64,000 bases of DNA, from positions 1,360,221 to 1,424,220 of the forward strand of contig NW_018408623.1 of NCBI RefSeq assembly GCF_002113885.1. The letters run 5' to 3'. The position numbers were made by a program, and so were the translations under genes. The notes beneath the pieces were generated by a model that ran no database searches, was not told the DNA's origin, and was given only the letters and a program-made list of their open reading frames with translations. Source of the DNA: Mizuhopecten yessoensis (taxonomy: Eukaryota). Positions 1,778-34,380 of the stretch are shown piece after piece; position 1 is the stretch's first letter, and each line of letters begins with the position of its first letter.

Positions 1778-3997
1778 ACTTGTGTTGTACTAGGACTCAA
1801 GGATGGGTGTTTACTTGTATTGTATTAGGACTCAAGAATAGGTGTTTACTTGTATTGTACTAGGACTCAAGGATAGGTGTTTACTTGTGCCGTACTAGGA
1901 CTCAAAGATGGGTGTTTACTTTTGTTGTACTAGGACTCAAGAATAGGTGTTTACTTGTATTGTACTAGGACTCAAGGATAGGTGTTTACTTGTGTTGTAC
2001 TAGGACTCAAAGATGGGTGTTTACTTGTGTTGTACTAGGACTCAAGGAAATGTGTTTACTTGTATTGTACTAGGACTCAAGGATAGGTGTTAACTTGTGT
2101 TGTACTAGGACTCAAGGATGGTTGTTTACATGTATTGTACTAGGACTCAATGATAGGTGTTTACTTGTATTGTACTATGACTCAAGGATAGGTGTTTACA
2201 TGTATTGTACTAGGACTCAAGAATGGGTGTTTACTTGTATTGTACTAGGACTCAAGGATAGGTGTTTACTTGTGTTGTACTAGGACTCAAGGATGGGTGT
2301 TTACTTGTACTGTACTAGCACTCAAAGATGGGTGTTTACTTGTGTTGTACTAGGACTCAAGGATAGGTGTTTACATGTATTGTACTAGGACTCAGGGATA
2401 GGTGTTTACATGTATTGTACTAGGACTCAATGATAGGTGTTTACTTGTATTGTACTAGGACTTTGTGTTGTACTAGGACTCAAGGATGGGTGTTTACATG
2501 TATTGTACTAGGACTCAATGATAGGTGTTTACATGTATTGTACTAGGACTCAAGGATAGATGTTTACTTGTATTGTAGTAGGACTCAAGGATAGATGTTT
2601 ACAAGTGTTGTACTATGACTCAAGGATAGGTGTTAACTTGTGTTGTACTAGGACTCAAGGATGGGTGTTTACTTGTATTGTACTAGGACTCAAAGATGGG
2701 TGTTTACTTGTGTTGTACTAGGACTCAAGGATGGGTGTTTACATGTATTGTACTAGGACTCAATGATAGGTGTTTACTTGTATTGTACTAGGACTCAAGG
2801 ATGGGTGTTTACTTGTATTGTACTAGGACTCAAGGATAGGTGTTTACTTGTATTGTACTAGGACTCAATGATAGGTGTTTACATGTATTGTACTAGGACT
2901 CAGGGATAGGTGTTTACATGTATTGTACTAGGACTCAGGGATAGGTGTTTACATGTATTGTACTAGGACTCAGGGATAGGTGTTTACATGTATTGTACTA
3001 GGACTCAAGGATAGATGTTTACTTGTATTGTAGTAGGACTCAAGGATAGATGTTTACAAGTGTTGTACTATGACTCAAGGATAGGTGTTAACTTGTGTTG
3101 TACTAGGACTCAAGGAAATGTGTTTACTTGTATTGTACTAGGACTCAAGGATAGGGGTTTACTTGTGTTGTACTAGGACTCAAGGATAGGTATTTACATG
3201 TATTGTACTAGGACTCAGGGATAGGTGTTTACATGTATTGTACTAGGACTCAATGATAGGTGTTTACTTGTATTGTACTAGGACTCAAGGATAGGGGTTT
3301 ACTTGTGTTGTACTAGGACTCAAGAATGGGTGTTTACTTGTATTGTACTAGCACTCAAAGATGGGTGTTTACTTGTGTTGTACTAGGACTCAAGGATAGG
3401 TATTTACATGTATTGTACTAGGACTCAGGGATAGGTGTTTACATGTATTGTACTAGGACTCAGGGATAGGTGTTTACATGTATTGTACTAGGCCTCACGG
3501 CTAGCTGTTTACTTGTATTGTAGTAGGACTCAAGGATAGGTGTTTACAAGTGTTGTACTATGACTCACGGATAGGTGTTAACTTGTGTTGTACTAGGACT
3601 CAAGGAAATGTGTTTACTTGTATTGTACTAGGACTTTGTGTTGTACTAGGACTCAAGGATATGTGTTTACTTGTATTGTACTAGGACTCAAGGATAGGTG
3701 TTTACATGTATTGTACTAGGACTCAAGTATAGGTGTTTACTTGTATTGTACTAGGACTCAAGAATGGGTGTTTACTTGTATTGTACTAGGACTCAAAGAT
3801 AGGTGTTTACTTGTATTGTACTAGGACTCAAGGATAGGTGTTTACATGTATTGTACTAGGACTCAGGGATAGGTGTTTACATGTATTGTACTAGATCTCA
3901 AGGGTAGATGTTTACTTGTATTGTAGTAGGACTCAAGGATAGGTGTTTACAAGTGTTGTACTAGGACTCAAGGATAGGTGTTTACTTGTATTGTACT
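1778..3997. repeat. 35-bp minisatellite, about 63 copies
   Basis: Unit tgtattgtactaggactcaaggataggtgtttact with recurrent variants. Confidence 0.97.
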
Positions 3998-5535
3998 TGT
4001 ATCAGTTATCATGCGTGATGTTTAAGGAGATTTTGATAAATAGACCAAGATCATGAGACAAGTATATAGAGAATACTTAGTTACCTGTAGCAGGCAACCA
4101 TTAGATACTCAATTTACCTGCAATATTACACACACAAAACATATTTTCTTTGAAGAGATCTGGCAGTCTGGCATATAATGATGAAACTTCAATGAAATCA
4201 CATGTTGATCACATCATAGGACACAAATTTATTGTTTGTTGCATAAAAATCACCTGATTGCTGCTAAAGCTTGAGATTCTTGCTTTGAAAACATGGTCTG
4301 GCATTTAAATTACATTGTATATACTGTTCTTCATTTATTTGGATGCAAGTAGTACAAACACACGTACACTAAAGGTTGCCTTTGCATAAACTGAATCTGA
4401 ACAGGCATTGCCATTCGCATCATAGCAAACACATTTCTAATATCCTAAACAGCATCAAATTCTATTTTCAACTACAGTGATGTACTGGGTACTTTTTTTG
4501 AAAAAAATATATATGACAATTCAAGCCAGCTGCTGTTTTTTTCTGTTTTATAACAATGGTGTTATTTTTAGCCTGGTGGTAGCTATATACACAATCAACA
4601 GATAAGTTTTATTTTTATTTTGTAGCAGCCAGATAAAGTACATAAATAGGCACTATTGTAAAGTGCAAAGCTTGATTTGTAAGTTCAGTCATGGAGTAAA
4701 TTACATTAGATACATAGTTAGCTGATTTGTAACCTCCAACCTTTACAGGGGTAAGGGGTTACATTGTTTAATCAAATTTGTGACAGGTGTTCTCTTAAAT
4801 TACAAGCAACCGTTAGTAAAACCAAGTGGTCACTTTCTGTTGTTACCAGTGTGGGCTATACTTAGGTTGGTTTAAACAGTATTTTATTTCCTTCGTCATA
4901 TATTATAGTAAGTACACCGGTAAATAGCAATAGGATATGGCAACACAATTTTAAATCTTATATAAAACTATCTCAATTGAAATGTAATTACATTAAAGAA
5001 GTACTTCAACATACAGTTAATTAATACACATAAATTGTTTGAATTAACAGTTTGTGATAACACTGACCATTTCATGTGATGAACCAAAACAAAATCATAG
5101 GAAGGTATGCTAAAAGAAAGGAAACAGTAATGAAGAGAGCATGATCTATACTTAGGTTGAAGTATATTTGAATGACAAATGTTCACAAATAATATGTACT
5201 TCATGATAAGCTTTTGTTCATTAGGAATTTTAACGGGCAGTAATTAGAATCAGGATGGTTGGAATCTTGAGTAGATTAACTACTTTGATGTTTTAAGATT
5301 CAAAAACTTGAAAAATCAAGTTTATTTTATATTTGAAAATTTTAAGCAACTACAATTATATATAGAAACTGAATGTGGCGTTACAGGAATATTTTGTAGA
5401 AAGCCAGAGAGAGTACTCCAGCATTCAGCTCAATCAGCTGCTACAGAAAAGAAGTGCTGTCTGTTTTAGCACAGGGATCTAGCTGAGTTGAAGCCAAACA
5501 ATTAAAGGAAACCCCAAATATTGTAAATTCCTATA

Positions 5536-7537
5536 TGATATTGACTTTATTGCCTGTAGGTGACCCAACTGTTAAAAGTAAACTAGTGCCAACACTGAAT
5601 CAGCGTAATACCAGATTCATTATTTGTTAAGCAGTAAGTATCTTTCCTTTTATTGGAATAATATAAATCATGTGTTGATTATTCATTAATGCATGTATAC
5701 ATATTTTGATATTTGATTTAAGTAACTTTGTGATGCAGCCTTGGACTTAGTGTGGTAAAAACTACACATGGTATCACTATACAAGATAGATTCTTTCATT
5801 CACTGTATCCATAGAATAGGAATGCTTTAAAGACAGAATCAATGGCAGAAGATATCTTGGCATGTCTTAACACATAAAACATTAACACCTATGATGATTA
5901 TTGATATGATTTTTTCCCTATTGGTTATGGCATTTTAACTGCGATGTTATCAGTTATAGATAGAAATAGTGAGTTGTCAAATTATTGTTTCACACCAAAA
6001 TGGAATGGAGGTGTGTCGGTGTAGGAAGTTTGTGGTCAAGGGGAGATAATATGGAACCTAGGTTGCATGTGAAAAGTGTACTCCAACAGTGTTAGAGGTT
6101 TACACGGCGAAAAACTTTTGACAGGCGCCGCGTAACCTCTAACTGCCCATAGCTGATTTTCCCGACGCTGACTATCACATTTTCAAAGTTCAGATTAAGA
6201 AAGAGTATATCGTGTTTACATACATTTAAATGGTCAAAAGGGTCCAATAAATTATTCCTTTCCATAAATCCATGATTATATGAGAAAAATTTCATGTCAA
6301 AGACATAAATAATGAGTTTTTCCTCGTTCGAAGCGAAGCAGACAGCATTTGCCATGATTTTTCCGGTTAATACAAAAATTGATTACATGTAATGTTTCAC
6401 AAGCGGAATACAAACAAACTCCGTATCATTTCGTTCCGTTTGATATCCCCCCTGATATTTTGTATTAATCCAGAAGCCATGTTTTAAATTTAGGTCAGAG
6501 ATGTGCTACAACGACATGGACATGTATTTTGAGTGTTCTATTTCGTAATATACTATATATTTGTGTCTGTGACATACATATGAGATCTATATTATATAAA
6601 CGGTGAGTAGACATCGTTGTCATAAACTGTTAACCACTTAAGTGAGTTTTTCAAGCCAATTTTGTTCCGCCCGGATTTCGGGCGGAAACTGCATCAAAGA
6701 ATTAGTGCTTCGGAAATGAGAGGTTGCAGTCGGCAAAATCATATCCGATTGAAAAAAGGCCGACCAGCGGCCTCTCATGTTATGGGAGTAGTGAAAAGTG
6801 ATGTACATGTCAGCGGTAGATCACACATCTTCCTGAGGTTTTCGTGCTTAGTAATTCATGGATTCAATTTTCACTCGTTACACAGCAGTACCTGAATTGA
6901 TATCGACTTTATTGCCTGTAGGTGACCCAACTGTTAAAAGTTAACTATAGTGCCAACACTGAATCAGCGTAATACAAGATTCATTATTTGTTTGGCAGTA
7001 AGTATCTTTCCTTTTATTGGAATAATATAAATCATGTGTTGATTATTCATGAATGCATGTATACATATTTTGTTATTTGATTTAAGTAACTTTGTGATGC
7101 AGCCTTGGACTTAGTGTGGTAGAAACTACACATCATATCACTATACAAGATAGATTCTTTCATTCACTGTAACCATAGAATAGGATGCTTTAAAGACAGA
7201 ATCAATGGCAGAAGATATCTTGGCATGTCTTTACACATAACACATTAACACCTATGATGATTATTGATATGATTTTTTCCCTATTGGTTATGGCATTTTA
7301 ACTGCGATGTTATCAGTTATAGATAGAAATAGTGAGTTGTCAAATTATTGTTTCACACCAAAATGGAATGGAGGTGTGTCGGTGTGGGAAGTTTGTGGTC
7401 AAGGGGAGATAATATGGAACCTAGGTTGCATGTGAAAAGTGATGTACATGTCAGCGGTAGATCACACATCTTCCTGAGGTTTTCGTGCTTAGTAATTCAT
7501 GGATTCAATTTTCACTTGCTACACAGCAGTACCTGAA
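5536..7537. repeat. Tandem duplication of a ~640-bp unique segment (copy 1 5536-6896 interrupted by an insertion; copy 2 6898-7537)
   Basis: tgatat(t/c)gactttattgcctgtaggtgacc ... acacagcagtacctgaa occurs twice, roughly 3% diverged by eye. Confidence 0.95.
6079..6790. mobile_element. 712-bp non-autonomous DNA transposon-like insertion, 10-bp TSD GTGAAAAGTG, short imperfect TIR (TACTCC...GGAGTA); superfamily uncertain
   Basis: GTGAAAAGTG at 6069-6078 and 6791-6800; uninterrupted site gcatGTGAAAAGTGatgtac in duplicate copy near 7432; first 20 nt match the reverse complement of the last 20 nt at 14/20; CpG-rich versus flanks. Confidence 0.9.
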
Positions 7538-17979: not shown

Positions 17980-18348
17980 CTGTCTGGTCACCCATAGGTA
18001 CACCAGTGCCTTAGTACCATGGTCATCTATCTGTTTGGTCACCCATAGTTACACCAGTGCCATAGGACCATGGTCATCTATCTGTTTTGTCACCCATAGT
18101 TACACCAATGCCTTAGGACCATGGTCATCTATCTGTTTGCTCACCCATAGGTACACCAGTGCCTTAGGACCATTGTCAGCTATCTGTTTGGTCACCCATA
18201 GTTACACTAGTGCCTTAGGACCATGGTCATCTATCCGTTTGGTCACCCATAGGTACACCCGTGCCTTAGGACCATGGCCATCTATCTGTTTGGTCACCCA
18301 TAGGTACACCAGTGCCTTAGGACCATGGCCATCTACCTGTCTGATCAC
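17980..18348. repeat. 51-bp minisatellite, about 7 copies
   Basis: Unit ctgtttggtcacccataggtacaccagtgccttaggaccatggtcatctat; yields the 17-aa repeat ORF 17969..18370. Confidence 0.95.
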
Positions 18349-19280
18349 TTATACATACAGAAACCCTTAACTTAGGCATTTGATCATCTAGGGTATGTAA
18401 ATACTATTGTGGGCAGTGGTCGGTCATCTACCAGACATGTCAATCATTATAGGTACAGCAAATTGTATTGGATGTAGGTATGTCAAGGGTCTGATGATAG
18501 GGGTCATTATGGTAGTTGTTGTGAAAGACATTCTCCTACATTACACTAACATTGCAGAGAGTTCTTGCTCAAGTAAAATGGTATGAAATCACACATATGT
18601 TGGCTGGGACTCAACTGTTTGTGGCTAATTCTGTCAAGTTCTTGTTGACCTTTGTACAGTAGTGTTTATTGCAATGTTGATATGGACAAACTGACCCGGT
18701 AGGTACTGGAAGGAAACCACTTAACCAGTATTTGTGTAATTGGTAAGGTAGTTTATATAGACAAGGCCTGGTACAGTTTAGTCTCATCCAAGATATTTAG
18801 ACAGGACAGCAGCCCTCAAATACCTACTAGTTAGGATTATATTGATAGCATTCCTATCACAGAGCCTTGCGTTCATGAAGCCATGAAACCCCTTTTACCT
18901 GTAATTATCAGATTTAACTCTCTGCGGTAGCCCCAGCATCCAGGCTTCAGATGTAACTTTTGGCTATGTAAAACATCACAACAGTGGTTATGATTAAGCC
19001 TCTTGGATTGCCGGAAATAGGTACCCATCTATAATGTACTGAGGAAGGAGGGCACATTGATCTAGGACTGCATGGTTTACAAAAACATACTAACCTGTGG
19101 CTTATTTGCTTGTAGATCGTTAGGTTGTTCACCTCCTCAACTTAATATCATGCTGCCCTTCAGGGAAAAATAACCTCTTGTCATTTTGTCCAATTCCCAG
19201 AAGTATATGGGGTTGCAGAAGTTAATTGAAGAATGGCAACCCGATTTTATTGTAGGGAAGGACCCACCTCACATATCACT

Positions 19281-20411
19281 GTTTTGGTGCAGGAAGTGAC
19301 CACCTCCCGTGTCAATGTTTTGGTGCAGGAAGTGACCACCTCCTGTGTCAATGTTTTGGTGCAGGAAGTGACTACCTCCTGTGTCAATGTTTTGGTGCAG
19401 GAAGTGACCACCTCCTGTGTCAATGTTTTGGTGCAGGAAGTGACTACCTCCTGTGTCAATGTTTTGGTGCAGGAAGTGACTACCTCCTGTGTCAATGTTT
19501 TGGTGCAGGAAGTGACTACCTCCTGTGTCAATGTTTTGGTGCAGGAAGTGACTACCTCCTGTGTCAATGTTTTGGTGCAGGAAGTGACTACCTCCTGTGT
19601 CAATGTTTTGGTGCAGGAAGTGACTACCTCCTGTGTCAATGTTTTGGTGCAGGAAGTGACTACCTCCTGTGTCAATGTTTTGGTGCAGGAAGTGACTACC
19701 TCCTGTGTCAATGTTTTGGTGCAGGAAGTGACTACCTCCTGTGTCAATGTTTTGGTGCAGGAAGTGACTACCTCCTGTGTCAATGTTTTGGTGCAGGAAG
19801 TGACTACCTCCTGTGTCAATGTTTTGGTGCAGGAAGTGACTACCTCCTGTGTCAATGTTTTGGTGCAGGAAGTGACTACCTCCTGTGTCAATGTTTTGGT
19901 GCAGGAAGTGACTACCTCCTGTGTCAATGTTTTGGTGCAGGAAGTGACTACCTCCTGTGTCAATGTTTTGGTGCAGGAAGTGACTACCTCCTGTGTCAAT
20001 GTTTTGGTGCAGGAAGTGACTACCTCCTGTGTCAATGTTTTGGTGCAGGAAGTGACTACCTCCTGTGTCAATGTTTTGGTGCAGGAAGTGACTACCTCCT
20101 GTGTCAATGTTTTGGTGCAGGAAGTGACTACCTCCTGTGTCAATGTTTTGGTGCAGGAAGTGACTACCTCCTGTGTCAATGTTTTGGTGCAGGAAGTGAC
20201 TACCTCCTGTGTCAATGTTTTGGTGCAGGAAGTGACTACCTCCTGTGTCAATGTTTTGGTGCAGGAAGTGACCACCTCCTGTGTCAATGTTTTGGTGCAG
20301 GAAGTGACTACCTCCCGTGTCAATGTTTTGGTGCAGGAAGTGACTACCTCCTGTGTCAATGTTTTGGTGCAGGAAGTACTGACCTCCTGTGTCATTGTTT
20401 TTGGTGCAGGA
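19281..20411. repeat. 36-bp minisatellite, about 31 near-identical copies
   Basis: Unit gttttggtgcaggaagtgactacctcctgtgtcaat. Confidence 0.98.
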
Positions 20412-21557
20412 AAGAACCCACCTATAATGTATTGTTTCAAGGTTTGCTGTTGTAAAGTACATATAGAAACACAATGATCTTGGGAAACGAAAGAAAAAAG
20501 ATGACTTTATGTATGCAAAAATTATGCCCAGGTTTTCAAAACATGAAAAAGAATATTTTGGTTTAGATATCCATCTATTTCAGTTGCAGAATTAGAGGGT
20601 GAGTGTGGGTATTATTTCAGTACCAAGGTGTTGTTTTTGTCGTGAAACAATGTTTCTACAGATTTTTCTAATAAGTATAACCTCTTACTACATGTGTTAA
20701 GACCCGCCTTATGAAAGTCATAAACCTGTGTCTTTATCTAGATAACTGTAATTCAGACAGTATGGCTTAGCTATATCCAATTATACTGTTGGAGATTGAA
20801 AGCAGATGGGACGAAATTGACTGGTCCATTTATTGATCTTAAATTCATAATTTTAAGTTGTAAAATGTGTTCTTTGTACAGCTTCCTTTTTTTTTTAAAT
20901 AAAAGTAATAAATACAACTATCCTTCTGTGTTCTTGTTATAGGTATAGGCCTATACTTCTAAACAGGAATGTAAACAGACTCAACCCTCTACTGCTACAC
21001 ATTGTTAGGTTTCTGCCTGATTCTGTTGAGAAATCGGCCTTTAGCTCTAAACAGAGCTTAGTTTGAAGCTTAATAGAGTACCACCTGTCTAAATAAGATA
21101 CAACTAGAACCAAAACTTTAAAACTTGTCATTAGTGTCTATGTGCATATTTTTTGTTTAATTTCTTCCTTCATGCTTTTTTTAGCCAGATTCACTGTTGT
21201 AAAGTCAGATGTCAGATACAGACTTACAAGTAGGGTATTGTTAGCTGTGTGTGGACATCTATGGATCTCCAGTCTGATTCCTGGAGACAAGTGTCACATG
21301 CGTCCAGCGTTTATAAGTCTAGTGTTTGATTTGATACTTGACCAAGACGTTGCAATGAACAACCCTAACAACAATTGAAGCAAACATTACAACATTTTTC
21401 ATTGCTTTTTCTGTTGTTTTTTTTTTTAAATGTATGGATTAGTTAATTTTTGAATGTGATATAAAAAAGCAAGCAAACTATTTCCTCAATAATATGAAAT
21501 TTGAGATCCTGCATTACTTTTACATAAACTACAGTTGACCTGAACCCCAAAAGGGAA

Positions 21558-29590: not shown

Positions 29591-31490
29591 TATCACTCCC
29601 CCTAATGTTGTAGCCGATCGTTGGTTACCAATTTCACAACTATCACTCCCCCTAATGTTGTAGCCGATCGTTGGTTACCAATTTCACAACTATCACTCCC
29701 CCTAATGTTGTAGCCTATCGTTGGTTACCAATTTCACAACTATCACTCCCCCTAATGTTGTAGCCGATCGTTGGTTACCAATTTCACAACTATCACTCCC
29801 CCTAATGTTGTAGCCGATCGTTGGTTACCAATTTCACAACTATCACTCCCCCTAATGTTGTAGCCGATCGTTGGTTACCAATTTCACAACTATCACTCCC
29901 CCTAATGTTGTAGCCGATCGTTGGTTACCAATTTCACAACTATCACTCCCCCTAATGTTGTAGCCGATCGTTGGTTACCAATTTCACAACTATCACTCCC
30001 CCTAATGTTGTAGCCGATCGTTGGTTACCAATTTCACAACTATCACTCCCCCTAATGTTGTAGCCGATCGTTGGTTACCAATTTCACAACTATCACTCCC
30101 CCTAATGTTGTAGCCGATCGTTGGTTACCAATTTCACAACTATCACTCCCCCTAATGTTGTAGCCGATCGTTGGTTACCAATTTCACAACTATCACTCCC
30201 CCTAATGTTGTAGCCGATCGTTGGTTACCAATTTCACAACTATCACTCCCCCTAATGTTGTAGCCGATCGTTGGTTACCAATTTCACAACTATCACTCCC
30301 CCTAATGTTGTAGCCGATCGTTGGTTACCAATTTCACAACTATCACTCCCCCTAATGTTGTAGCCGATCGTTGGTTACCAATTTCACAACTATCACTCCC
30401 CCTAATGTTGTAGCCGATCGTTGGTTACCAATTTCACAACTATCACTCCCCCTAATGTTGTAGCCGATCGTTGGTTACCAATTTCACAACTATCACTCCC
30501 CCTAATGTTGTAGCCGATCGTTGGTTACCAATTTCACAACTATCACTCCCCCTAATGTTGTAGCCGATCGTTGGTTACCAATTTCACAACTATCACTCCC
30601 CCTAATGTTGTAGCCGATCGTTGGTTACCAATTTCACAACTATCACTCCCCCTAATGTTGTAGCCGATCGTTGGTTACCAATTTCACAACTATCACTCCC
30701 CCTAATGTTGTAGCCGATCGTTGGTTACCAATTTCACAACTATCACTCCCCCTAATGTTGTAGCCGATCGTTGGTTACCAATTTCACAACTATCACTCCC
30801 CCTAATGTTGTAGCCGATCGTTGGTTACCAATTTCACAACTATCACTCCCCCTAATGTTGTAGCCTATCATTGGTTGCTAGTTTCACAACTATCACTCCC
30901 CCTAATGTTGTAGCCTATCATTGGTTGCTAGTTTCACAACTATCACTCCCCCTAATGTTGTAGCCTATCATTGGTTGCTAGTTTCACAACTATCACTCCC
31001 CCTAATGTTGTAGCCTATCATTGGTTGCTAGTTCCACAACTATCATTCCCCCTAATGTTGTAGCCTATCATTGGTTGCTAGTTCCACAACTATCACTCCC
31101 CCTAATGTTGTAGCCTATCATTTGTTGCTAGTTTCACAACTATCACTCCCCCTAATGTTGTAGCCTATCATTGGTTGCTAGTTTCACAACTATCACTCCC
31201 CCTAATGTTGTAGCCTATCATTGGTTGCTAGTTTCACAACTATCACTCCCCCTAATGTTGTAGCCTATCATTGGTTGCTAGTTTCACAACTATCACTCCC
31301 CCTAATGTTGTAGCCTATCATTGGTTGCTAGTTTCACAACTATCACTCCCCCTAATGTTGTAGCCTATCATTGGTTGCTAGTTTCACAACTATCACTCCC
31401 CCTAATGTTGTAGCCTATCATTGGTTGCTAGTTTCACAACTATCACTCCCCCTAATGTTGTAGCCTATCATTGGTTGCTAGTTTCACAGC
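29591..31490. repeat. 50-bp minisatellite, 38 copies in two homogeneous variant blocks
   Basis: Type A tatcactccccctaatgttgtagccgatcgttggttaccaatttcacaac x25 (29591-30840); type B ...tagcctatcattggttgctagtttcacaac x13 (30841-31490). Confidence 0.98.
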
Positions 31491-32356
31491 TACATGTATT
31501 ACTGTCCATTCTATAGTAGAGCATCATTACTAGTTATCTGTTTCACAATTACCAAAGCCTTAAATATTATAGCCCGTCATTGGTTATTGACAGTTTGACA
31601 GTTATCACTGACCCTAGTTTACTATATTGGCGTATCATTGCAACACTTTGTCAGTGTTACATTAATCATTGCCCGTTTTGCAGTCAATACTATCAGATAT
31701 TGTGACTTGGGATATTGTTGGTGAGATTCTCAATGCTATCTATCAATTCAGTATTATAAACCATCGTTGACATGAATCAGGGAACTGTTAGAAATTTGCC
31801 AAGTTGTATTGCATGTGAGATGATGCGTGTTTCCTGGGTATGTGGGTGAGCAGCGACTGATTCCTGTACAGACATGGCCCCTGACATGCTTGTTGTGCAG
31901 TGGAAGTAACAAGACTCATGGGGCACCTGCTCAGGCCAAACAGTTCAGTCTAGTTTGTCATCACTAGAATAATTACATGTTGACTGACATCAACTGCTCC
32001 TTGTCTACAGCCACTGACAGGCAGGGTCTTCATTACAGGATAGGAGACACGTGCTTCAGTCCAAAGTTACTGCCAAATCCTGTACCAAACCTGGTATGGT
32101 GCTGTCAAGGGTCTTCTTCCTTAAATCTCCTATTCTACAGTGTGAATAAAAGAATATGATCCATTTTGTTGGCAGATCATATTCCATAAACAGTCCACAA
32201 TGAATCCCAATAAATGCATTTCTTTACCAGTATGTTACATACATGCTATATTTATATTTGTAGTAGAACAACTGTGTTCTCATTGGATCTGCAACATCAT
32301 TTGTCACAAACAATTTAGAAATAACATTCTCAGGTTTTTGTCATATCGTTTATATA

Positions 32357-32502
32357 GGATCTTACATGAGTTTCCATTTCATATGAGATTTATGAAACGA
32401 GTCTAAGAAATTTTCAATTTAGCGAGGATCTGGCGAGCTAAAACGAAAAATTTGTGACGAGTTTCATAAATTTCATATGAAATGAAAATGAGTGTAAGAT
32501 CC
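32357..32502. mobile_element. 146-bp foldback (palindromic) non-autonomous element, possibly Crypton-associated
   Basis: ggatcttaca..catttcatatga.atttatgaaac..gtc mirrored by gac..gtttcataaat.tcatatgaaatg..tgtaagatcc around a central gcgaggatctggcgagc; no TSD seen. Confidence 0.7.
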
Positions 32503-32809
32503 TTTTGACGTCATGTACTTGTCCTAGGCGTGACGTCACCATTGAAACAATTGGAACTTACAGCCAATCACAGGGCTGATAGGTCATATTACACATACAC
32601 ATGTATGCTATAATATATAGAGAGTTGTTTTTAAATACCCAATATAAAATAAAAGAAATTATTTGAAAATATTTTCTATTTTTAAATTCCTTTCTGTGAT
32701 ATATTCTCTCGGGTTGTATTTGGTAGATTATGTTGTACTTTATGGTAGGTAGTGTACACTTTTTTCTAGGTGTGGTATAATCTTTTTAGTTGTAAATATT
32801 TCTCAATGA

Positions 32810-34380
32810 TTTGAGAGTGGTAAACTTACTATGGTGGTGTATGCCAATATATAATATATGGTAGTGCTTAATGGTATTTATTCTATGGTAATGAAAGTAA
32901 TATACATTCTATGGAAATGAGAGTGGAATACATTTTTATTAGTGTAAATAGTGGTATACATCCTTCAGTAGTTAAGAGTGGTATACTTCCTTTGGTAGTT
33001 TAGAGTGGTATATATCCTATGGTAGTTTTAAAGCGATATACTTCTTATAGTAGGTTAAAGTGGTATACTTCCTATGGTTGATTAGAGTGGTCTTCTTCCT
33101 ATGGTAGTTTAGAGTGGTCTACTTCCTATGGTAGTTTAGAGTGGTCTACTTCCTATGGTAGTTTAGAGTGGTATACTTCCTATGGTTGATTAGAGTGGTA
33201 TACTTCCTATAGTTAATTAGAGTGGTATACTTCCTATGGTTGATTAGAGTGGTATACTTCCTATGTTTGATTAGAGTGGCATACTTCCTATGGTTGATTA
33301 GAGTGGTATACTTCCTATGGTTGATTAGAGTGGTATACTTCCTATAGTTGATTAGAGTGGTATACTTCCTATGGTTGTTTAGAGTGGTATATTTCCTATG
33401 GTTGATTAGAGTGGTATACTTCCTATGGTTGATTAGAGTGGTATACTTCCTATGGTAGTTTAGAGTGGTATACTTCCTATGGTTGATGAGAGTGGTCTAC
33501 TTCCTATGGTAGTTTAGAGTGGTATACTTCCTATGGAAGTTTAGAGTGGTATACTGCCTATGGTTGATTAGAGTGGTATACTTCCTATGGTAGTTTAGAG
33601 TGGTATACTTCCTATGGTTGATTAGAGTGGTAAACTTCCTATGGTAGTTTAGAGTGGTAAACTTCCTATGGTAGTTTAGAGTGGTCTACTTCCTATGGTA
33701 GTTCAGAGTGGTATACTTCCTATGGTTGATTAGAGTGGTATACTTCCTATGGTCTGTTAGAGTGGTCTACTTCCTATGGTAGTTTAGAGTGGTCTACTTC
33801 CTATGGTTGATTAGAGTGGTCTACTTCCTATGGTAGATTAGAGTGGTCTACTTCCTATGGTAGTCTAGAGTGGTATACTACCTATGGTAGATTAGAGTGG
33901 TCTACTTCCTATGGTAGTTTAGAGTGGTATACTTCCTATAGTTGATTAGAGTGGTATACTTCCTATGGTTGATTAGAGTGGTAAACTTCCTATGGTAGTT
34001 TAGAGTGGTATACTTCCTATGGTTGATTAAAGTGGTCTACTTCCTATGGTAGTTTAGAGTGGTAAACTTCCTATGGTAGTTTAGAGTGGTATACTTCCTA
34101 TGGTTGATTAGAGTGGTATACTTCCTATGGTAGTTTAGAGTGGTCTACTTCCTATGATTGTATAGAGAGGTCTACTTCCTATGGTAGTTTAGTGGGATAT
34201 ACTTCCTATGGTTGATTAGAGTGGTATATTTCCTATGGTGTTATATTATAGTATCTTATGATTGTATAGAGAGGTATACTTCCTATGGTAGTTTAGTGGG
34301 ATATACTTCCTATGGTTGATTGGAGTGGTAAACTTCCTATGGTGTTATATTATAGTATCTTATGATTGTATAGAGAGGTA
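32810..34380. repeat. 27-bp minisatellite, about 50 copies, degenerate edges
   Basis: Unit agagtggtatacttcctatgg(ttgatt/tagttt); two interspersed variants. Confidence 0.96.

What the first reader, a model, noticed from the sequence alone, without database searches (positions are those of the whole stretch)
6069..6800. Young 712-bp insertion with exact 10-bp TSD and atypical TACTCC termini, proven by an empty site next door
Seen: the duplicate segment at ~7430 has a single GTGAAAAGTG, while copy 1 has GTGAAAAGTG[TACTCC...GGAGTA]GTGAAAAGTG, so boundaries and TSD are unambiguous. The TIR is only 6 bp perfect (14/20 extended), the element is CpG-rich, and it has no transposase. Known: 9-11-bp TSDs are typical of Mutator/MuDR, whose ends usually start with G and often have long TIRs; TA+CTCC ends resemble Stowaway MITEs, but those duplicate only TA and the empty site has no TA here. 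Inference: a non-autonomous member of a poorly characterised or unclassified DNA transposon family.
Basis: partly seen in the sequence, partly recalled or inferred. Interest (0 to 1): 0.72.

Follow-up and report, generated by a model that had tools for sequence, protein, structure and literature searches.

The report
Scallop miniature transposon, probably Academ-type
The 712-bp insert is a real, recently amplified, non-coding cut-and-paste jumping element of the Yesso scallop; its 9-10-bp target duplications and TAC...GTA ends fit the little-studied Academ (AcademH) group, so it is a new family of a known kind, not a new kind.

Summary
The element is window 6079-6790 (712 bp), flanked by GTGAAAAGTG twice, with one copy of that 10-mer at the paralogous empty site 7432-7441.

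The genome is Mizuhopecten yessoensis; its assembly size matches GCF_002113885.1. It holds about 155 copies with the internal region and about 600 recognisable 5' ends. Thirty full-length copies lie 0.1-2.1% from their consensus and all end TACTCC...GGAGTA. Their TSDs are 10 bp (22) or 9 bp (7).

Most other copies are internal-deletion derivatives with many different breakpoints. This pattern suggests interrupted gap repair after excision. One of four resequenced individuals carries an insertion-free form of the site.

Each end is a 12-nt tip followed by a hairpin. Targets favour CAN-N10-NTG.

The termini are not atypical. All 18 curated bivalve Academ consensus sequences I saw begin TA(G/C) and end (C/G)TA, and AcademH is reported to make 9-10-bp TSDs. 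The MULE examples begin GG.

No autonomous partner with these ends was found, so the superfamily call stays an inference (about 0.6). It is a new member of a known kind, of modest interest.

The parts
6069..6078 (.). left copy of the 10-bp target site duplication GTGAAAAGTG; preceded by CAT (C at -3, A at -2)
6079..6790 (+). 712-bp non-coding, non-autonomous transposon copy (TACTCC...GGAGTA); 16 differences from the consensus of 30 copies
6079..6090 (+). 12-nt unpaired 5' tip (TACTCCAACAGT), the outer part of the imperfect TIR
6091..6143 (+). 5' subterminal palindrome/hairpin (about 18-bp stem starting at TTAGAGG, 16-nt loop), DNA fold z = -3.7
6665..6687 (+). internal 9-bp-stem GC hairpin (TTCCGCCCGG...CGGGCGGAA)
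6716..6778 (+). 3' subterminal palindrome/hairpin (stem based on GAGAGG/CCTCTC), DNA fold z = -3.6
6779..6790 (+). 12-nt unpaired 3' tip (GTTATGGGAGTA)
6791..6800 (.). right copy of the TSD GTGAAAAGTG; followed by ATG (T at +11, G at +12)
7432..7441 (.). paralogous empty site: a single GTGAAAAGTG in the second unit of the tandem duplication
5536..6896 (.). unit 1 of a locus-specific 640-bp tandem duplication (carries the insertion)
6898..7537 (.). unit 2 of the tandem duplication (uninterrupted), 97.5% identical to unit 1

Best explanation
The insert is one copy of a MITE-like, non-coding, non-autonomous cut-and-paste DNA transposon family of the Yesso scallop. It is most likely moved in trans by the DDE transposase of an Academ element of the AcademH lineage.

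Proposed mechanism:
- The transposase recognises roughly the outer 45-70 nt of each end. Each end is a 12-nt tip beginning TACTCC, followed by a palindrome whose base is AGAGG.
- It cuts the element out and joins it to staggered nicks 10 bp (sometimes 9 bp) apart, in a target that weakly favours CAN-N10-NTG. Gap filling then gives the TSD.
- Double-strand breaks left by excision are repaired from another copy. When that repair aborts, an internally deleted copy remains. This would explain the hundreds of short derivatives with different junctions between the two hairpins.

Shown: insertion with TSD, exact ends, copy number, low divergence, the deletion series, and an insertion-free form of this site in another individual.

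Inferred: the identity of the transposase, the cut-and-paste route, and the gap-repair origin of the deletions.
For: Transposition with fixed geometry:
- 30 of 30 copies share the same end nucleotides. TSDs are 10 bp in 22 copies (19 exact) and 9 bp in 7, with one unclear.
- An empty paralogous site sits next door.

Young burst:
- Copies are 0.14-2.1% from consensus. 98 of 135 variable columns are singletons. Median pairwise difference is 2%.
- CpG o/e is 1.18 in a genome window at 0.34.

Census:
- 155 matches to an internal 30-mer with up to 3 mismatches.
- 638 matches to the 5' 20-mer with up to 1 mismatch, including about 40 from one tandem array.

Deletion series:
- Of the 216 ends that lacked the internal C-run at the expected distance, most rows listed show the first 27-60 nt joined to the last 14-70 nt at many different junctions.
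- The same junction classes appear as joints 6102-6138 to 6720-6752 in contigs of four individuals.

Segregation: run X3 has a 164-nt unitig that reads 6049-6068, then one TSD copy, then 6801-6934, with no mismatch and running into the unit-1-specific flank.

Constraint on the ends: a relative in a foreign contig (L061) is 84-85% identical overall. Its first 70 nt show 4 differences and its last 95 nt about 7. One stem pair is changed on both sides (ATGAGAGG/CCTCTCAT to ATAAGAGG/CCTCTTAT).

Target preference: C at -3 in 11/19 copies (p = 2e-4) and G at +12 in 13/19 (p = 4e-6), placed symmetrically.

Superfamily:
- AcademH makes 9- or 10-bp TSDs (PMC10045372).
- 18 of 18 curated bivalve Academ consensus sequences seen start TA(G/C) and end (C/G)TA, two of them with TAC. 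3 of 3 MULE and 2 of 2 Kolobok start GG or AG (PMC10294476 supplement).
- Academ is expanded in bivalves: 100 curated families against 39 MULE.
Against: - No longer element bearing both ends was found. Stray ends whose sequence departs from the family after 22-60 nt are all singletons on different scaffolds.
- None of these stray ends lies near a MULE, XPG_I or Helicase_C match.
- Pfam has no Academ transposase model that I know of, so Academ transposases could not be searched for directly.
- The TA(G/C) signature was read from consensus sequences labelled Academ-1, from two non-scallop bivalves. It was not read from AcademH proper.
- I could not read the AcademH paper.
- 9-10-bp TSDs are also within the Mutator range.
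Confidence: 0.6

Rival explanations
1. The same kind of non-autonomous cut-and-paste element, but mobilised by a Mutator-like (MULE) transposase.
For: MuDR-group elements make TSDs of up to 10 bp. The genome holds at least 90 matches to the MULE domain PF10551, several in open frames of 500-1000 codons.
Against: The ends start TAC, not the GG/GGG seen in the three curated bivalve MULE consensus sequences. The TIR is only 6 nt perfect. None of 30 MULE loci has the end motifs within 1.5 kb. No MULE match lies near any stray end. 10 bp, not 9 bp, is the main TSD length.
Confidence: 0.22
2. The family belongs to an undescribed DDE (or other) transposon group. The tip-plus-hairpin ends would then reflect a recognition or processing mode not shared with Academ or Mutator.
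For: No partner was found. The two ends share only the 6-nt tip and the AGAGG motif, yet both carry a hairpin placed exactly 12 nt from the tip. One stem pair is changed on both sides between species.
Against: TSD length and terminal trinucleotides both fit one described lineage. Subterminal palindromes are common in MITEs. The single two-sided stem change could be chance: I estimate about 0.3 for one such pair among about 36 at 15% divergence (my own calculation).
Confidence: 0.13
3. The insert is not a transposition product of a transposase. It would instead be a retroposed SINE-like copy, a Helitron-type rolling-circle copy, or DNA captured during break repair.
For: It has no coding capacity and very high copy number. 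Somewhere else a tandem array repeats the first 27 nt of its 5' end, which recalls Helitron end arrays.
Against: TSD length is fixed at 9-10 bp and the ends are invariant. There is no tail, no tRNA/7SL/5S-like head and no Rfam match. Helitrons make no TSD, and repair capture would not recur with the same ends.
Confidence: 0.03

Closest known systems
AcademH lineage of the Academ superfamily (Kojima 2020, Mob DNA 11:15; cited in PMC10045372)
   Same: TSD of 9 or 10 bp. Terminal TA(G/C)...(C/G)TA as in curated bivalve Academ consensus sequences. The host group (bivalves) is one in which Academ is expanded.
   Different: No transposase or helicase is encoded here, and no autonomous element with the same ends was found. 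The hairpin 12 nt from each tip is not a feature I can document for Academ.
Non-autonomous Mutator-like elements (MULE MITEs)
   Same: Long TSD (9-10 bp), no coding capacity, many internal-deletion derivatives.
   Different: Ends begin TAC rather than G-rich. The TIR is very short. 10 bp rather than 9 bp predominates.
Stowaway-type Tc1/mariner MITEs (TA + CTCC... ends)
   Same: The first six letters look like TA plus CTCC. Both are small and non-coding.
   Different: Stowaway duplicates TA only. Here TA is part of the element, the empty site has no TA, and the TSD is 9-10 bp of any sequence.
Internally deleted P, Ac/Ds and Mu elements produced by abortive gap repair
   Same: A series of copies that keep both ends and lose the middle at many different junctions.
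   Different: This is the same process, not the same family. Here the junctions cluster between two subterminal hairpins that share a complementary ACCTCT/AGAGGT motif.

Membership tests
Academ / AcademH | TSD of 9 or 10 bp (AcademH; AcademX makes 3-4 bp) | tested here: met
   22 of 30 copies have 10 bp and 7 of 30 have 9 bp. The criterion comes from PMC10045372.
Academ / AcademH | Terminal signature 5'-TA(G/C)...(C/G)TA-3' | tested here: met
   The element ends TACTCC...GGAGTA. 18 of 18 curated bivalve Academ consensus sequences start TAG or TAC, against 0 of 5 MULE/Kolobok. The signature was derived here from a published library. It is not a stated definition and is not specific to AcademH.
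Academ / AcademH | Autonomous partner with an Academ DDE transposase and an SF2 (RecQ-like) helicase sharing the termini | tested here: inconclusive
   No long element with both exact 20-nt ends was found. No Helicase_C match lies near a stray end. There is no Academ profile to search with, and loci could not be cut out.
Academ / AcademH | Repbase rule for non-autonomous elements: same TSD length and alignment of terminal positions 1-11 (at most 1 mismatch) to a classified element (PMC4455052) | tested here: inconclusive
   Exact 10-12-mers of both ends were absent from the stored part of the bivalve library. That file is cut and holds no scallop entries. Repbase and Dfam are not available here.
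Mutator-like elements | TSD of about 8-11 bp, usually 9 | tested here: met
   TSDs are 9-10 bp, compatible, although 10 bp predominates.
Mutator-like elements | G-rich termini and usually long TIRs | tested here: not met
   The ends start TAC and the TIR is 6 nt perfect, 15/20. Curated bivalve MULEs start GG.
Mutator-like elements | A MULE transposase element sharing the ends | tested here: inconclusive
   30 MULE loci lack the end motifs within 1.5 kb. No MULE match lies near a stray end. Flanks were short and only the best 30 loci were read.
Stowaway / Tc1-mariner MITE | TA target site duplication | tested here: not met
   The empty site has no TA at the junction, and the TSD is 9-10 bp of varied sequence.
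MITE (descriptive class) | Under about 800 bp, non-coding, TIR, TSD, high and homogeneous copy number | tested here: met
Helitron / Helentron | No TSD; TC...CTRR ends with only a 3' hairpin | tested here: not met
   A TSD is present in 29 of 30 copies. Ends are TAC...GTA, and both ends carry a hairpin.
SINE / retroposed copy | Pol III head or A-rich/simple tail, and TSDs of variable length | tested here: not met
   No Rfam match, no tail, and fixed TSD length.

The most novel reading that the evidence does not exclude
The family is moved by a transposase that has not been described, or by an Academ-type enzyme that needs a DNA hairpin 12 nt from each tip. In that case its very young, homogeneous burst and its readable deletion series would give direct access to an active, uncharacterised transposition system in a bivalve.
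Probability: 0.13. Interest if true: 0.6.

Novelty: new member of a known kind. Interest (0 to 1): 0.33.

Why it matters
Academ is among the least studied cut-and-paste superfamilies, and no transposition assay exists for it to my knowledge. This family offers several things such an assay would need:
- Several hundred nearly identical non-autonomous copies with sharply defined ends.
- A defined minimal end, inferred from the deletion derivatives.
- A symmetric target preference.
- At least one site that appears to segregate in the population.

For the scallop genome it also marks recent or ongoing DNA-transposon activity. Beyond that it is an ordinary MITE-type family.

Tried and rejected
- Search for an autonomous partner with 'anchor plus exclusion' patterns: a 20-nt end, then a fixed gap, then not-C (or not-G) where the family has a C-run. 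This gave 117 + 45 + 54 ends. Most of the rows listed are deletion derivatives. The few ends that run into foreign sequence are singletons and never pair on one scaffold.
- Cross-matching those places with MULE, XPG_I and Helicase_C matches found none within 30 kb. XPG_I gave only nine exon-sized hits, so the genome shows no XPG-carrying Academ with a long ORF.
- MULE loci L031-L060 lack the end motifs.
- Public scans with the 5' end found nothing in viral contigs and one metagenome contig with an 85% relative. The flanks of that contig match this genome only through 66-80% repeats, so it comes from another organism. That copy shows no TSD.
- Rfam found nothing. Stop-free frames in the element reach at most 65 codons.
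- The AcademH paper is not held. The stored bivalve class II library is cut before the scallop entries.
- Substitutions show no excess of CpG transitions (19 of 221), so methylation decay cannot be used for dating.
I did not try to obtain genome DNA by another tool. The stray ends, the C798 array and the large helicase ORFs were therefore not read.
- A majority-rule consensus of this non-viral MITE was used only inside scripts to measure divergence.

Full report
**The observation**

One search shows GTGAAAAGTG at 6069-6078 and 6791-6800. These bracket a 712-bp insert (6079-6790) that begins TACTCC and ends GGAGTA.

The next 640-bp unit reads straight through a single GTGAAAAGTG at 7432-7441, with the same 20 nt on either side. 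The repeat finder places the two units at 5536-6896 and 6898-7537. With the insert and one TSD copy removed, they align at 97.5%. The unit occurs nowhere else in the genome. It is therefore a local tandem duplication, and the insertion came later.

- TIR 6 nt perfect, 14/20 in this copy.
- CpG o/e 1.17 against 0.34 for the window.
- No coding capacity: the longest stop-free frame is 65 codons.

**The host**

The window's assembly has 987,588,634 bases in 82,659 contigs. Table S1 of PMC10294476 gives that same size for Mizuhopecten yessoensis GCF_002113885.1. The host is therefore the Yesso scallop.

**A family, not a one-off**

The 712 bp finds at least 40 full-length copies at 96-98% identity, out of 858 first-look candidates. 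I read 30 of them with flanks.
- All 30 start TACTCC. All but one end GGAGTA; L018 ends GGAGGA.
- TSDs are 10 bp in 22 copies (19 exact, 3 with one or two mismatches) and 9 bp in 7. One is unclear.
- Copies differ from their majority consensus by 0.14-2.1%. The median pairwise difference is 2%. 98 of 135 variable columns are singletons. This is the pattern of a recent burst.

An internal 30-mer matches 155 places with up to 3 mismatches. The 5' 20-mer matches 638 places with up to 1 mismatch, about 40 of them in one tandem array.

The window's copy has 16 differences from the consensus. Thirteen of these are not shared with the other 29 copies. Two of them (G at position 11 and one T fewer after AGAGG) recur in many elements elsewhere. 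This copy therefore comes from a side lineage or is older than the youngest copies.

**Deletion derivatives**

I searched for ends not followed by the family's C-run at the expected distance, hoping to find a longer, autonomous relative (216 hits). Instead, most of the rows listed join the first 27-60 nt directly to the last 14-70 nt. There are many different junctions, and a few of them recur.

The same classes appear independently as joints 6102-6138 to 6720-6752 in the contigs of four resequenced individuals.

A series of copies that keep both ends and lose the middle at varied points is what interrupted gap repair leaves after excision of P, Ac/Ds or Mu elements (established knowledge). 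I take it as indirect evidence for cut-and-paste movement.

The junctions lie between two subterminal hairpins whose inner arms share a complementary ACCTCT/AGAGGT motif. This may favour template switching there; that link is my inference.

**Anatomy of the ends**

Folded as DNA, each end is a 12-nt unpaired tip followed by a hairpin with a stem of about 18 bp. The hairpins lie at 6091-6143 and 6716-6778, with z-scores of -3.7 and -3.6. The two stems share only the AGAGG at their base.

A relative in a foreign contig (L061, 742 bp) is 84-85% identical overall. Its first 70 nt show only 4 differences and its last 95 nt about 7. One stem pair has changed on both sides, from ATGAGAGG/CCTCTCAT to ATAAGAGG/CCTCTTAT. 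The same two states, plus two mixed ones, are seen among scallop copies.

The ends are thus under constraint. The single two-sided change is only a hint.

The flanks of L061 match the scallop genome only through 66-80% repeats. The contig therefore comes from another organism. The whole non-autonomous unit appears to be older than its recent burst here.

**Target**

In the 19 copies with an exact 10-bp TSD, the TSD itself has no consensus. The flanks do:
- C at -3 in 11/19 copies and A at -2 in 11/19.
- T at +11 in 13/19 copies and G at +12 in 13/19.
- Binomial p is 2e-4 for the C and 4e-6 for the G, before correction for about 120 tests.

The preferred target is thus the symmetric CAN-N10-NTG. 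The window's site (CAT-GTGAAAAGTG-ATG) fits it.

**Segregation**

In run X3, a 164-nt unitig reads 6049-6068, then one copy of the TSD, then 6801-6934 without mismatch. It runs into the unit-1-specific variants and the start of unit 2 (tables 5 and 8).

No such sequence exists in the reference. The simplest reading is an allele of unit 1 without the insertion. An allele with three units is not excluded.

In the other three runs the empty-site unitig stops at the variant that separates the two units, as expected if both continuations are present.

**Superfamily**

Only Mutator-like elements and AcademH make TSDs this long. That comparison rests on my own knowledge. The paper read (PMC10045372) supplies only the MuDR range (4-10 bp) and the AcademH lengths: 9- or 10-bp TSDs, against 3-4 bp for AcademX.

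The class II library of PMC10294476 is held in cut form. I read the ends of 18 Academ consensus sequences from it.
- All 18 start TAG or TAC and end CTA or GTA. Examples are TAGTCC...GGACTA, TACTGAG...CTCAGTA and TACTCTAGG.
- Three MULE consensus sequences start GG, and two Kolobok start GG or AG.

The same paper reports a bivalve-specific expansion of Academ: 100 curated families against 39 MULE.

Earlier notes of this scan, which are unchecked, report AcademH-type elements (a DDE transposase facing a RecQ-like helicase) and miniature derivatives of them in this same genome. I did not test those notes.

**What is missing**

No autonomous partner was found.
- Ends that run into unrelated sequence are singletons on different scaffolds.
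- None lies near a MULE, XPG_I or Helicase_C match.
- 30 MULE loci lack the end motifs.
- Pfam has no Academ transposase model that I know of.
I did not seek the DNA by another route.

By the Repbase rule for non-autonomous elements (same TSD length and terminal positions 1-11 aligned; PMC4455052), the assignment is not yet formal.

**Verdict**

The element is a non-autonomous cut-and-paste transposon of a young, abundant scallop family (confidence about 0.95). It is most likely an AcademH-dependent MITE (about 0.6). The alternatives are a MULE-dependent element (about 0.2) and an undescribed partner (about 0.1).

It is a new member of a known kind. The tip-plus-hairpin ends, the symmetric target and the deletion series are useful details rather than surprises.

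Noticed in passing
G000:C798:673623-675017 (not in the window): A tandem array of about 40 units. Most are 36 bp apart and some are 108-144 bp apart. Each unit starts with the element's first 27 nt, tip included (TACTCCAACAACGTTAGAGGTTTACAG). This is a satellite grown from a transposon end.
   Followed up: no
G000:C5302:1948305-1995068 (not in the window): Three Helicase_C matches sit in very long open frames (1719, 1725 and 1809 codons) within 47 kb, on both strands. They could be a host gene cluster or helicase-carrying transposons.
   Followed up: no
G000:C1687:167761-167952 (not in the window): A weak MULE-domain match (34 bits) lies inside an open frame of 2912 codons.
   Followed up: no
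L061:2947-3688 (metagenome contig NSIT01000330.1): A 742-bp relative of the element (84-85% identity) lies in DNA of another organism. No TSD is visible at its ends, and a GACG-type microsatellite follows close behind. The contig's first 446 nt resemble a tandem repeat of the scallop at 66-79%.
   Followed up: partly
window 5536-7537: A 640-bp tandem duplication unique to this locus (97.5% identity between units). Resequenced individuals differ in the structure of its distal end: run X3 lacks the reference's unit-2-type end.
   Followed up: partly
window 19233-20477: Three overlapping open frames of about 400 codons lie on both strands of the same 1.2 kb. GC is raised here (0.44 for 18001-20000). 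This is probably a low-complexity or tandem-repeat stretch. Pfam gave only sub-threshold hits.
   Followed up: partly
window 2001-4000, 30001-34000: Strong local GC-skew swings: +0.39 at 2001-4000, -0.26 at 30001-32000, then +0.23 at 32001-34000.
   Followed up: no
30 family copies (L001-L030): Substitutions away from the family consensus show no excess of CpG transitions (19 of 221, with 30 CpG sites in 712 bp), although the surrounding genome is strongly CpG-depleted. T>G is the commonest change.
   Followed up: partly
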